A stretch of DNA of 62,781 bases, counting the filler, from Sluysia triapertura (lineage: Eukaryota), in the NCBI GenBank assembly GCA_046118255.1. It is 5 parts of 5 records of this genome, joined end to end, with 100 filler letters (N's around TTAATTAATTAA, not from the genome) between each part and the next. Parts side by side here need not be neighbours in the genome. Positions count along the whole stretch, not along the records: positions 50,645 to 62,781 come from JBJNIA010135399.1; 4 more parts are not named here. One strand, written 5' to 3'. Under the pieces are notes generated by a model. The model searched no databases. It was not told the DNA's origin and saw nothing but the letters and a program-made list of their open reading frames with translations. Positions 60,340 to 62,466 of the stretch are shown here, piece by piece (position 1 is the first letter of the stretch; each line of letters begins with the position of its first letter). A program made the translations under genes and the position numbers.

Positions 60340-62415
60340 CTACCAAATAATTAATGATATCACTATCGTGGTCAAGTGGCCTTGTGAAGCTTTTATTGTA
60401 GGTTTATTTACATTTAATAAAATTAATTGTTTATGAATTACAGCTTTATTTATTAGAGAAAGAAAACTTGATTTTAAATTAGATTCTTCATGAATTAATG
60501 ATCTGTTATCAATAGTTTGGTGCTTAAGGCACTTAAAATACGTCGTGTTAAAATTTCGAGGGCAAAAATTATAATAAAAGAATACGATGATTTTATTTAC
60601 GTAAAAATTGAGTACACTCACAGTTATTTTTTTAAAACGTACAACTTTATCAAAAACAAAAATCTTACACGGAAAGTATTCTCTATGTTGACGGAATCCA
60701 TCCTGCTGCTCCACGCACAGGCTATCCTGATCCAGCCGTGAGACCACATTGTAATATTCAGATGGTAAAGAGATCATCAAATATGTATCAACCGCTTCAT
60801 TGTTCATTACAAGATTTGTAGAATTTAAATTATAATATTTATATGACGTAAAGGTAATCAAATACATATCGACTGTTTTATTGTTCATTACAAAGTACAT
60901 GAAATTCGAGTCATAATGTTTAGGTAGCAAAATCACAATCAAATACGCATCAATTACTTTGTCGTTTATTTCGAAATACGTCAAATTAAAATCATAATAC
61001 TTAGATAATATAAAAGTGATCAGGTATATATCAAGTGCTTTATCAGTCATTGTAAAATATATAAAATTTAAGTTATAATATTTAAAAGAAAAAGCTACAA
61101 TCGAATACGTATCAATTACTTTATTGATTATTTCGAAATACGTCAAATTTAAATTATAATACTTAGATAATATAAAAGTGATCAGGTATACATCAAGTGC
61201 TTTATCAGTCATTGTAAAATATATAAAATTCAAGTTATAATATTTAAAAGCCAAAAAATAAAACCAATAACGACTGAAAAATGACTTGTTGTCACCTTGC
61301 TCCATCTTTTGTTTCCCTTCTTGACTTCCAACTCGCCTCGAATACTCAGCAATGCTTGACATGACACCAGCAACTGGACTCTTCAGAAATACGTCAACAA
61401 GTAGATTAATTTCGCTTAAATTCATATCATTAATATCGTGACACTCTTTTAATTCTGTATTCATATACAAACCAACTACATTGCTCAACCCATCAACACT
61501 GACTCGTAAATTCAGTTCATAATCGGATCCAACTAACAAGCATGTATGAATACTAGCTTCTACTATTTTCAGTGAATTTATAATACGAACAATATATGTT
61601 CCACTATTAAGAAACAATCTTTTTAATTCTGTATTTACATCATTGGACAAACTATTTTCGTTCAAATTAACAGCATTTGAATTTATAGGTTTAATATTTA
61701 GCGTTCCTTTCTGCCTCCATCTAACATCACTACTTGTTGTAAATGCATGTTCAGAAAGAACTGTAGAATCATCTTCGGCTGTTCTAATTATTGATTCTAA
61801 ATTAAAAATACTGAATATAATTACTAAAAAAATCGTGAAATCAAATGGTTGCCAATGTGAATTAAAACGTCGATAAAATGTATATAGAGTTAAAACAACG
61901 TGACGACGAAACTTAACGCGATCTGAAAACGACTGAATTTCTCCATCCATTTTACGCAAGCCATCTTCAACTTCGATAGACTGACTTGATTGACGAAGTT
62001 CCTTATTTATTTCTAAATATAACCTTCCCAATTTTATTTTTGTTTTGAAACGCAACCTTTGGCTTTTAGCTCTTTTTAGTGCATCTGATGTAGTAGTATA
62101 AAGTTTTCGTGGCATTACCATTTGGTTTGATGTAGAAACGTAATCTAAAATTGAATTAATTACTCCTTCTGAATAACTTCTATTGATGGTAGATCTAAAA
62201 TAGGTTATAAGTTGAACATAACTTTTCATCATTTCTTCCGATCCATTTAATTTGAAATTAGTCTTAACAATCTGTTTAAAAGCTTTAAAACTCGATTCTC
62301 GACGATCACCTTGTGATTCTATTCGGAGGATTTTTTTTAATTCTTCTATAACTACTAAATGGTTTCCTTCTTTTAATGAGCTAGCATGATAATATTGATC
62401 TCCCAAACCAGACAT
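60340..62415 (-). CDS. 691-aa intronless chimeric ORF: CSN2 N-terminal part + EMC10 + 27-aa repeats + possible RT fragment
   Basis: Single open frame in the ORF track; the segments are described in the sub-features below. Confidence 0.8.
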   Translation of the reverse strand: MSGLGDQYYHASSLKEGNHLVVIEELKKILRIESQGDRRESSFKAFKQIVKTNFKLNGSEEMMKSYVQLITYFRSTINRSYSEGVINSILDYVSTSNQMVMPRKLYTTTSDALKRAKSQRLRFKTKIKLGRLYLEINKELRQSSQSIEVEDGLRKMDGEIQSFSDRVKFRRHVVLTLYTFYRRFNSHWQPFDFTIFLVIIFSIFNLESIIRTAEDDSTVLSEHAFTTSSDVRWRQKGTLNIKPINSNAVNLNENSLSNDVNTELKRLFLNSGTYIVRIINSLKIVEASIHTCLLVGSDYELNLRVSVDGLSNVVGLYMNTELKECHDINDMNLSEINLLVDVFLKSPVAGVMSSIAEYSRRVGSQEGKQKMEQGDNKSFFSRYWFYFLAFKYYNLNFIYFTMTDKALDVYLITFILSKYYNLNLTYFEIINKVIDTYSIVAFSFKYYNLNFIYFTMTDKALDIYLITFILSKYYDFNLTYFEINDKVIDAYLIVILLPKHYDSNFMYFVMNNKTVDMYLITFTSYKYYNLNSTNLVMNNEAVDTYLMISLPSEYYNVVSRLDQDSLCVEQQDGFRQHREYFPCKIFVFDKVVRFKKITVSVLNFYVNKIIVFFYYNFCPRNFNTTYFKCLKHQTIDNRSLIHEESNLKSSFLSLINKAVIHKQLILLNVNKPTIKASQGHLTTIVISLIIW
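60751..61245 (-). repeat. In-frame 81-bp (27-aa) tandem repeat, six units plus a partial unit
   Basis: Units start KYYNLN / KYYNLN / KYYNLN / KYYDFN / KHYDSN / KYYNLN / EYYN at exact 81-bp spacing from 61245 to 60759. Units 1 and 3, and units 2 and 4, are most alike. Confidence 0.92.
61250..61840 (-). other. EMC10: EMC10 (ER membrane protein complex subunit 10)-derived segment of the chimera
   Basis: EHAF...WRQKGTL, NSGTYIVRI, CLLVGS...LRVSVDGLSNVVGL and DNKSFFSRYWFY match EMC10 (EHSF...FRKRGSL, NGLYRVRI, CSLVES...LHVDVAGNVVGV, EQKSFFAKYWMY). A signal-peptide-like stretch TIFLVIIFSIF precedes it. Confidence 0.85.
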
Positions 62416-62466
62416 TTTTTAATGTATCAATTTTTAAAATTTTCTATTATCTTCAACGTCAGACAT
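61940..62466 (-). other. COPS2: COP9 signalosome subunit 2 (CSN2)-derived segment of the chimera
   Basis: QYY...LKE, FKAFKQIVKTNFKL, EMMKSYVQLITYFRS, YSEGVINSILDYVSTS and DALKRAKSQRLRFKTKIKLGRLYLE match CSN2 (QYYNSKALKE, FKALKQMIKINFKL, INSILDYISTS, RLWFKTNTKLGKLYLE). The PCI domain is absent. An upstream MSDVED at 62466 resembles the CSN2 start MSDMED. Confidence 0.9.

What the first reader, a model, noticed from the sequence alone, without database searches (positions are those of the whole stretch)
60340..62466. Intact chimeric gene fusing two unrelated housekeeping genes (CSN2 + EMC10) to a repeat array
Seen: one 691-codon frame without stops in very AT-rich DNA. It contains a CSN2-like N-terminal ~155 aa, a short linker, nearly all of EMC10 (signal-peptide relic to the FFSRYW motif), six 27-aa repeats and a tail. 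Known: CSN2 is the nuclear/cytosolic COP9 scaffold that contacts cullin-RING ligases through its N-terminal region, EMC10 is an ER type-I membrane protein, and I know of no natural fusion of the two. Seen: normally conserved residues are altered (EWGFK>ESSFK, RLWFK>RLRFK) and a block is deleted, so these are diverged copies. There are no introns, although host genes here have one every ~100-500 bp. Inference: captured or retro-processed fragments were joined into a new gene whose frame is kept open despite divergence, possibly a new membrane-tethered cullin-interacting decoy or effector.
Basis: partly seen in the sequence, partly recalled or inferred. Interest (0 to 1): 0.92.

Follow-up and report, generated by a model that had tools for sequence, protein, structure and literature searches.

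The report
Gene-fragment mosaic inside a multi-copy repeat
The long open frame really does join pieces of the CSN2 and EMC10 housekeeping genes, but it is one of tens of copies of a repeated element and this copy is drifting like a pseudogene, so it is not a unique conserved new gene.

Summary
A 691-codon frame (60340-62415, minus strand) is by far the longest open frame in this ~25% GC piece. It contains a CSN2 N-terminal piece (aa 4-162, about 50% identical to animal CSN2), a linker, an EMC10 piece (aa 191-390), six 27-aa repeats from an 81-bp minisatellite, and a 140-aa tail.

The interpretation needs correcting. In the one DNA run that holds this sequence, about 59400-62400 is covered by hundreds of distinct contigs that are 85-99% alike. 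Their summed depth is 800-2300, against about 19-26 in the unique flank. So this is a dispersed repeat family of tens of copies.

The repeated unit also carries, on the same strand, a third gene piece: an Unkempt-like CCCH finger.

At 17 sites the window copy differs from at least 77% of the family. Fifteen of these are non-synonymous, and five have moved away from residues conserved in CSN2 or EMC10. That fits neutral decay (omega ≤0.5 rejected, P=0.007).

Best reading: a young copy of a mobile or retro-amplified gene-fragment mosaic, whose frame is inherited from a recent source copy. No terminal repeats or Helitron hairpin were found, so the element class is open. Whether the source copy encodes a working protein is untested.

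The parts
60340..62415 (-). 691-codon open frame (stop codon at 60340-60342)
61930..62406 (-). CSN2 N-terminal fragment (aa 4-162). It has no PCI domain, a 6-aa deletion and altered conserved residues.
61846..61929 (-). Linker (aa 163-190) with no homology. It may be former EMC10 upstream or 5'UTR sequence read in frame (inference).
61246..61845 (-). EMC10-like fragment (aa 191-390). It runs from the signal-peptide relic (aa 191-213, the only hydrophobic segment) to YWFYFLAF. It has no start codon of its own, and its membrane helix is cut after about 6 residues.
60763..61248 (-). Six 81-bp (27-codon) tandem units with a 162-bp higher-order period, read in frame.
60343..60762 (-). 140-aa tail with no homolog or Pfam family. 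Its atlas recognition score is 1223, in the range typical of non-proteins.
62388..62500 (-). Tandem duplication of about 55 bp covering the start codon region. The upstream copy reads MSDVEDNRKF and then a stop.
60146..60236 (.). 48-bp tandem duplicate in the spacer between the two open frames. Its copy number varies among family members.
   Evidence: table 5 (joint 60192>60145)
59437..59913 (-). Second open frame of 159 codons in the same repeated unit. It has one Unkempt-like CCCH finger (59746-59832) and an intron-like gtaagt...tactaac...tag starting at 59634.
59400..62420 (-). Approximate extent of the high-copy repeated unit. Edges are known only to within about 50-100 bp.
   Evidence: tables 2 and 3. 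Depth is 40 at 59376 and 370-1326 at 59648-59813. It is 1182 at 62324 and 206 at 62408.

Best explanation
This is one fairly young copy of a dispersed repeat family with tens of copies in the source genome. The unit is about 3 kb. It is a mosaic of host-gene pieces, all on one strand:
- the first ~160 codons of CSN2;
- EMC10 from its signal peptide into its membrane helix;
- an 81-bp minisatellite and a tail without homologs;
- downstream, a second frame with an Unkempt-like CCCH finger.

The pieces were probably joined once, by RNA-level template switching or by capture into a mobile element. The mosaic was then amplified. The 691-codon frame is open because the source copy had it and this copy has diverged little from the family majority. 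The copy itself is evolving without protein-level constraint.

Shown: the mosaic, the copy number, and the neutral pattern of private changes. Inferred: how the pieces were captured and amplified, and the state of the source copy.
For: Mosaic: CSN2 and EMC10; CCCH finger.

Multi-copy:
- 2660 contigs of run X1 lie on 57000-62781. Of these, 290 are at least 99% alike, 506 are 95-99%, 1027 are 90-95% and 837 are below 90%.
- Summed depth is 800-2300 over 59500-62400, against 25-28 over 57000-57578. There a 3572-nt identical contig has depth 18.8.
- Between 5 and 44 distinct contigs carry the majority letter at single sites.
- Depth is even along the unit.

Junctions occur in other copies. Eight contigs carrying the majority letter at 61883 reach at least 63 nt to each side, covering the linker. 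An 86%-alike contig of run X2 spans 61150-61420, across the EMC10/repeat junction.

Neutral decay:
- Of 17 sites where at least 77% of depth differs from the window, 15 are non-synonymous and 2 synonymous.
- The neutral expectation is 73% non-synonymous. Omega 0.5 gives P=0.007 and omega 0.2 gives P=9e-6.
- The majority letters restore conserved residues at aa 3, 39, 80, 102 and 363.

At 1-2% divergence from the source, a copy escapes new stops with probability 0.13-0.37. So intact copies are expected among tens of copies.

The tail looks unlike a natural protein.
Against: - The source copy's open frame still needs explaining. The repeats plus tail are 302 codons without a stop, while the other five frames there hold 6-24 stops per segment. 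The six repeat units differ from each other by 17-40% (one pair is near-identical) yet none has a stop.
- Among the listed length changes in other copies, those inside the ORF net to 0 or -3 bases. Seven of assorted lengths fall in the 370-bp spacer 59643-60013 (table 4). This hints at frame conservation across the family.
- No hallmark of any transposon class was found: no terminal inverted repeats, long terminal repeats or target-site duplication, and no 3' hairpin with CTRR.
- Depth summed over contigs is not a strict copy number, and the library type of X1 is not on record.
Confidence: 0.65

Rival explanations
1. The family descends from, or includes, a working chimeric gene. The source ORF is kept open by selection and copies like this one are its retro- or DNA-level offspring. 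The protein would be signal-anchored, with the CSN2 piece in the cytosol and the EMC10 domain in the ER lumen.
For: The frame is open through 302 non-homologous codons in AT-rich DNA. Listed indels inside the ORF preserve the frame (table 4). A single hydrophobic segment, aa 191-213, lies between the two pieces. The unit's edges lie near the ATG and near an AATAAA at about 59420, as for a processed transcript.
Against: The window copy shows no purifying selection. The tail is not protein-like. No expression data could be obtained, because no RNA run holds the sequence. No related protein exists in the 15-billion-protein collection.
Confidence: 0.2
2. One reading: a single, unique new gene under selection, acting as a membrane-tethered cullin-binding decoy or effector.
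For: The long frame is intact and the fusion is real.
Against: There are tens of diverged copies in the same genome. Private changes are 15:2 non-synonymous and away from conserved residues. Only the first ~160 residues of CSN2 are present.
Confidence: 0.05
3. Assembly artefact: unrelated repeats were wrongly joined in the window's contig.
For: The region is repetitive. No single listed contig spans the whole ORF, and many spurious AT-rich joints are reported.
Against: The frame continues across both junctions. Several independent contigs with other letters cross the linker (61820-61946). A contig from a second run crosses 61250. Identical X1 contigs tile several parts of the stretch (table 8).
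Confidence: 0.03

Closest known systems
Gene-fragment capture by Helitrons (maize, bats, silkworm) and by Pack-MULE/CACTA elements
   Same: A non-autonomous repeated unit carries pieces of several unrelated host genes in one orientation. This gives chimeric open frames and transcripts, and the unit is amplified to many copies (PMC4778049, PMC4528327, PMC5861414, PMC1947982, PMC13317346).
   Different: No TIRs and no Helitron 3' hairpin with CTRR were found. The two main pieces lack introns. The fused frame is unusually long at 691 codons.
Chimeric processed retrocopies made by LINE reverse-transcriptase template switching, and retro-amplified processed pseudogene families (from general knowledge)
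   Same: The pieces are intron-free and in the same orientation. The unit has no terminal repeats, its 3' edge lies near an AATAAA, the copies are dispersed, and they decay neutrally.
   Different: No clear poly(A) tail or target-site duplication. There is no 5'-truncation gradient in depth. An intron-like sequence sits in the CCCH part. The EMC10 piece lacks its own 3' end.
Bs1 retroelement of maize, which carries fused pieces of three host genes in one ORF (from general knowledge)
   Same: Several host cDNA pieces are fused in frame inside a repeated element.
   Different: Bs1 has LTRs and a gag part. Here no LTRs were found, and the copia-gag hit is only sub-threshold (E 0.02-0.05).
Genuine CSN2 and EMC10
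   Same: Clear sequence homology over aa 4-162 and aa 191-390.
   Different: The CSN2 PCI domain and C-terminus are absent. The EMC10 signal peptide is internal and lacks a start codon, and its membrane helix is truncated.

Membership tests
CSN2 (COP9 signalosome subunit 2) | N-terminal helical-repeat region homologous to CSN2 | tested here: met
   aa 4-162, E down to 1e-31, 35-57% identity
CSN2 (COP9 signalosome subunit 2) | PCI domain (PF01399) and C-terminal helix needed to enter the signalosome | tested here: not met
   No PCI hit in the ORF. tblastn with full-length CSN2 finds nothing beyond 61936 anywhere in 50645-62781.
EMC10 | Match to the EMC10 family profile PF21203 | tested here: met
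   23.4 bits against a cut-off of 23. phmmer finds EMC10 proteins at E about 1e-10.
EMC10 | N-terminal cleavable signal peptide and complete C-terminal membrane helix | tested here: not met
   The hydrophobic relic sits at aa 191-213 with no Met between aa 157 and aa 315. Homology stops 6 residues into the helix.
Helitron (non-autonomous) | 3' hairpin followed by CTRR, 5' TC, insertion between A and T | tested here: inconclusive
   No perfect stem of at least 6 bp containing G/C, in either orientation. The edges are known only to about 50-100 bp, so the test is not decisive.
TIR DNA transposon (Pack-MULE/CACTA type) | Terminal inverted repeats at both edges | tested here: not met
   The best inverted alignment of the two edge regions scores 26, against a shuffle mean of 27. 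None reported.
LTR retrotransposon | Direct long terminal repeats; gag/pol | tested here: not met
   No direct repeat at the edges. The copia-gag hit is below threshold.
LINE-mediated processed retrocopy | No introns, poly(A) at the 3' end, target-site duplication | tested here: inconclusive
   The CSN2 and EMC10 parts are intron-free. AATAAA at about 59420 is followed by short A runs only. No duplication above chance. The host MBD2/3 gene nearby has introns but a ~520-nt first exon, so lack of introns is weak evidence.

The most novel reading that the evidence does not exclude
The repeat family stems from a working, lineage-specific chimeric gene whose 691-codon frame is kept by selection. 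Its product would be a signal-anchored protein showing the cullin-facing N-terminus of CSN2 to the cytosol and an EMC10 domain to the ER lumen. Its transcript has been copied tens of times, or the protein serves the element's own spread.
Probability: 0.2. Interest if true: 0.7.

Novelty: new member of a known kind. Interest (0 to 1): 0.35.

Why it matters
Mobile or retro-amplified mosaics of host gene pieces are a known source of new genes, best documented in plants and a few animals. This is a clear animal example: three host genes, an unusually long fused frame and tens of copies. It could show how such mosaics arise and whether any become functional. It is also a practical warning that a long intact frame in a repeat copy is not evidence of selection on that copy.

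Tried and rejected
- An exact-product look-up of the ORF found nothing.
- A word-based homolog search of aa 1-165 gave one nematode CSN2. The same search for the neighbouring MBD protein gave one unnamed transcript at 46% identity. The organism therefore stays unidentified. The named EMC10 hits are a tapeworm and a brachiopod. The host is an AT-rich animal with MBD2/3.
- Rfam and tRNA scans of the piece were blank. The G+C-richer patch at about 60690-60750 is therefore not a known RNA.
- TIR, LTR, target-site duplication and Helitron-hairpin searches were negative.
- Differences among the repeat units by codon position (117/106/149) show only a slight third-position excess, so they do not decide whether the units evolved as coding sequence.
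- The bacterial promoter/terminator scan is irrelevant here and at chance level.
- A literature search for a CSN2/EMC10 fusion found nothing relevant.
- No RNA run holds the sequence, so transcription could not be tested.
- The parental CSN2, EMC10 and Unkempt loci could not be sought, because no tool here holds this genome.

Full report
**What is there**

The piece 50645-62781 is 24.7% G+C. On the minus strand, 60340-62415 is a 691-codon ORF. It is the longest stop-free stretch in the piece by a wide margin: 692 codons against 199 for the next. The other five frames over the same bases carry 2-24 stops per segment.

An exhaustive phmmer search of 1.84 billion representative proteins matched two parts of the ORF:
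- aa 4-162 match CSN2 proteins, with E down to 1e-31 and 35-57% identity.
- aa ~197-396 match EMC10 proteins, with E about 1e-10 and 25-34% identity.

None of the 150 best hits covers both parts. Pfam reports only EMC10 (PF21203, 23.4 bits against a cut-off of 23).

tblastn shows each part as one uninterrupted match, 62406-61936 and 61830-61246. It finds no further CSN2 sequence (PCI domain) anywhere in the piece.

- ESSFK replaces EWGFK, RLRFK replaces RLWFK, and there is a 6-residue gap.
- EMC10 homology runs from the signal-peptide relic to YWFYFLAF.
- An 81-bp (162-bp higher-order) tandem array then replaces the rest of the membrane helix.
- The EMC10 part has no Met of its own. The only strongly hydrophobic segment in the whole ORF is aa 191-213.
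- The 140-aa tail has no Pfam or other match. Its atlas recognition score is 1223, well below the 2300 that 91 in 100 proteins of known families reach.

**The key new fact: the locus is repeated**

Only two public runs hold any of this sequence, and neither is on record as RNA. I laid their contigs on 57000-62781.

- Run X1 holds 59% of the sampled words. It gave 2660 aligned contigs across a spread of identities: 290 at 99% or more, 506 at 95-99%, 1027 at 90-95% and 837 below 90%.
- Summed depth is 25-28 over 57000-57578. There a 3572-nt identical contig has depth 18.8.
- Summed depth is 800-2300 over about 59500-62400.
- Single sites are covered by 5-44 distinct contigs carrying a letter other than the window's.

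The high-depth block ends on the left between 59376 (depth 40) and 59648 (370). It ends on the right between 62324 (1182) and 62408 (206). Depth is even along the block, with no 5'-to-3' gradient.

So the ORF sits in a unit of about 3 kb that is present in tens of diverged copies. The tool warns that summed depth is not a strict copy number. The count of distinct variant contigs supports the same conclusion independently.

**The junctions are not peculiar to this assembly**

- Eight contigs carrying the majority letter at 61883 extend at least 63 nt to both sides. They cover the linker from the signal-peptide relic to the last CSN2-like codons.
- An 86%-alike contig from the second run spans 61150-61420, across the EMC10/repeat junction.

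**A third gene piece**

Downstream in the same repeated block and on the same strand, 59437-59913 is open for 159 codons. It holds one CCCH finger most like those of Unkempt:
- Pfam zf-CCCH_UNK, E 1.3e-4, below the curated cut-off.
- PDB 5elh, E 0.006.
- The atlas hits are also zf-CCCH clusters.

This frame contains an intron-like gtaagt...tactaac...tag. The match is weak, so the parent gene is tentative.

**Is this copy under selection?**

One search lists 17 sites within the ORF where at least 77% of the depth carries a letter other than the window's. These are changes private to this copy.

- Fifteen are non-synonymous and two synonymous. None would make a stop.
- Using the mutation spectrum seen in the same run, neutrality predicts 73% non-synonymous. 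The observed share fits that (P=0.12 for 15 or more).
- The observed share rejects omega 0.5 (P=0.007) and omega 0.2 (P=9e-6).
- At aa 3, 39, 80, 102 and 363 the family majority has the residue conserved in CSN2 or EMC10, and the window copy has lost it.

The copy is therefore decaying. It is close to the family majority, differing at only 17 strongly supported sites in 2076 bases. At 1-2% divergence, the chance of having gained no stop is 0.13-0.37. Among tens of copies an intact one is expected, and a reader looking for long frames would pick exactly that copy.

**What remains unexplained**

The source copy must itself have had the full frame, including 302 codons with no homology.
- In this composition the other frames carry 6-24 stops over the repeats and 7-18 over the tail.
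- The six units differ from each other by 17-40% (one pair is near-identical), yet all are open.
- The length changes listed inside the ORF net to 0 or -3. Seven of mixed length fall in the 370-bp spacer (table 4).

These points hint that the frame mattered at the level of the source copy or the family. I give that reading about 0.2.

**Mechanism and class**

No terminal inverted repeats, long terminal repeats or target-site duplication were found at the approximate edges. No Helitron-type hairpin with CTRR was found either. No known RNA or tRNA is present.

Several features fit an RNA-level origin with later retro-amplification:
- the absence of introns in 1.1 kb of CSN2 and EMC10 sequence;
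- the common orientation of all pieces;
- an AATAAA near the 3' edge.

Other features leave DNA-level capture open:
- The neighbouring host MBD2/3 gene has introns but a ~520-nt first exon, so missing introns are weak evidence.
- The CCCH part has an intron-like sequence.
- No poly(A) tail is evident.

The element class is undecided.

**Comparison and verdict**

The closest known phenomena are transposon-borne gene-fragment mosaics and chimeric processed retrocopies. The former include Helitrons, Pack-MULEs and CACTA elements (PMC4778049, PMC4528327, PMC5861414, PMC1947982, PMC13317346).

The ORF is not a member of CSN2 (no PCI domain). It is not a complete EMC10 either, because the signal peptide is internal and the membrane helix is truncated.

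It is a new member of a known kind and of moderate interest.

Noticed in passing
window 54072-55901 (+): A host MBD2/3-type gene. Exon 1 (54072 to about 54590) holds the methyl-CpG-binding domain (Pfam E 8e-12). Further exons lie at about 54745-54890 and 55815-55901. The best database relative is only 46% identical, so the lineage is poorly sampled.
   Followed up: partly
window 57965-58350: A separate repeat of much higher copy number (summed depth 1870-4784 in X1, up to 57 variant contigs at one site). It lies next to an AT-rich simple-repeat block at 58544-58736 (depth 6752).
   Followed up: no
window 57841 / 62479: One X1 contig at single-copy depth (19.3) joins 57841 to 62479 with 6 other letters (TTCACG) between. 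It may be an empty-site allele lacking about 4.6 kb, or a false AT-rich match. 57841 lies in an 18-bp tandem repeat.
   Followed up: no
window 61246-61404: The second run, X2 (another organism label and study), holds a 159-nt contig identical to the window at depth 2.4, plus an 86%-alike one. Either the family is shared with a relative, or there is carry-over between libraries.
   Followed up: no
window 59433-59472 and 54000-54039: A 40-nt stretch, 78% alike and containing AAAACTTTTCGTTTC, occurs at the left edge of the repeated unit and just upstream of the MBD2/3 start. It may be chance in AT-rich DNA.
   Followed up: no
window 51839-51976: Two tandem copies of a 69-bp unit, 84% alike, in otherwise unannotated AT-rich DNA.
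   Followed up: no
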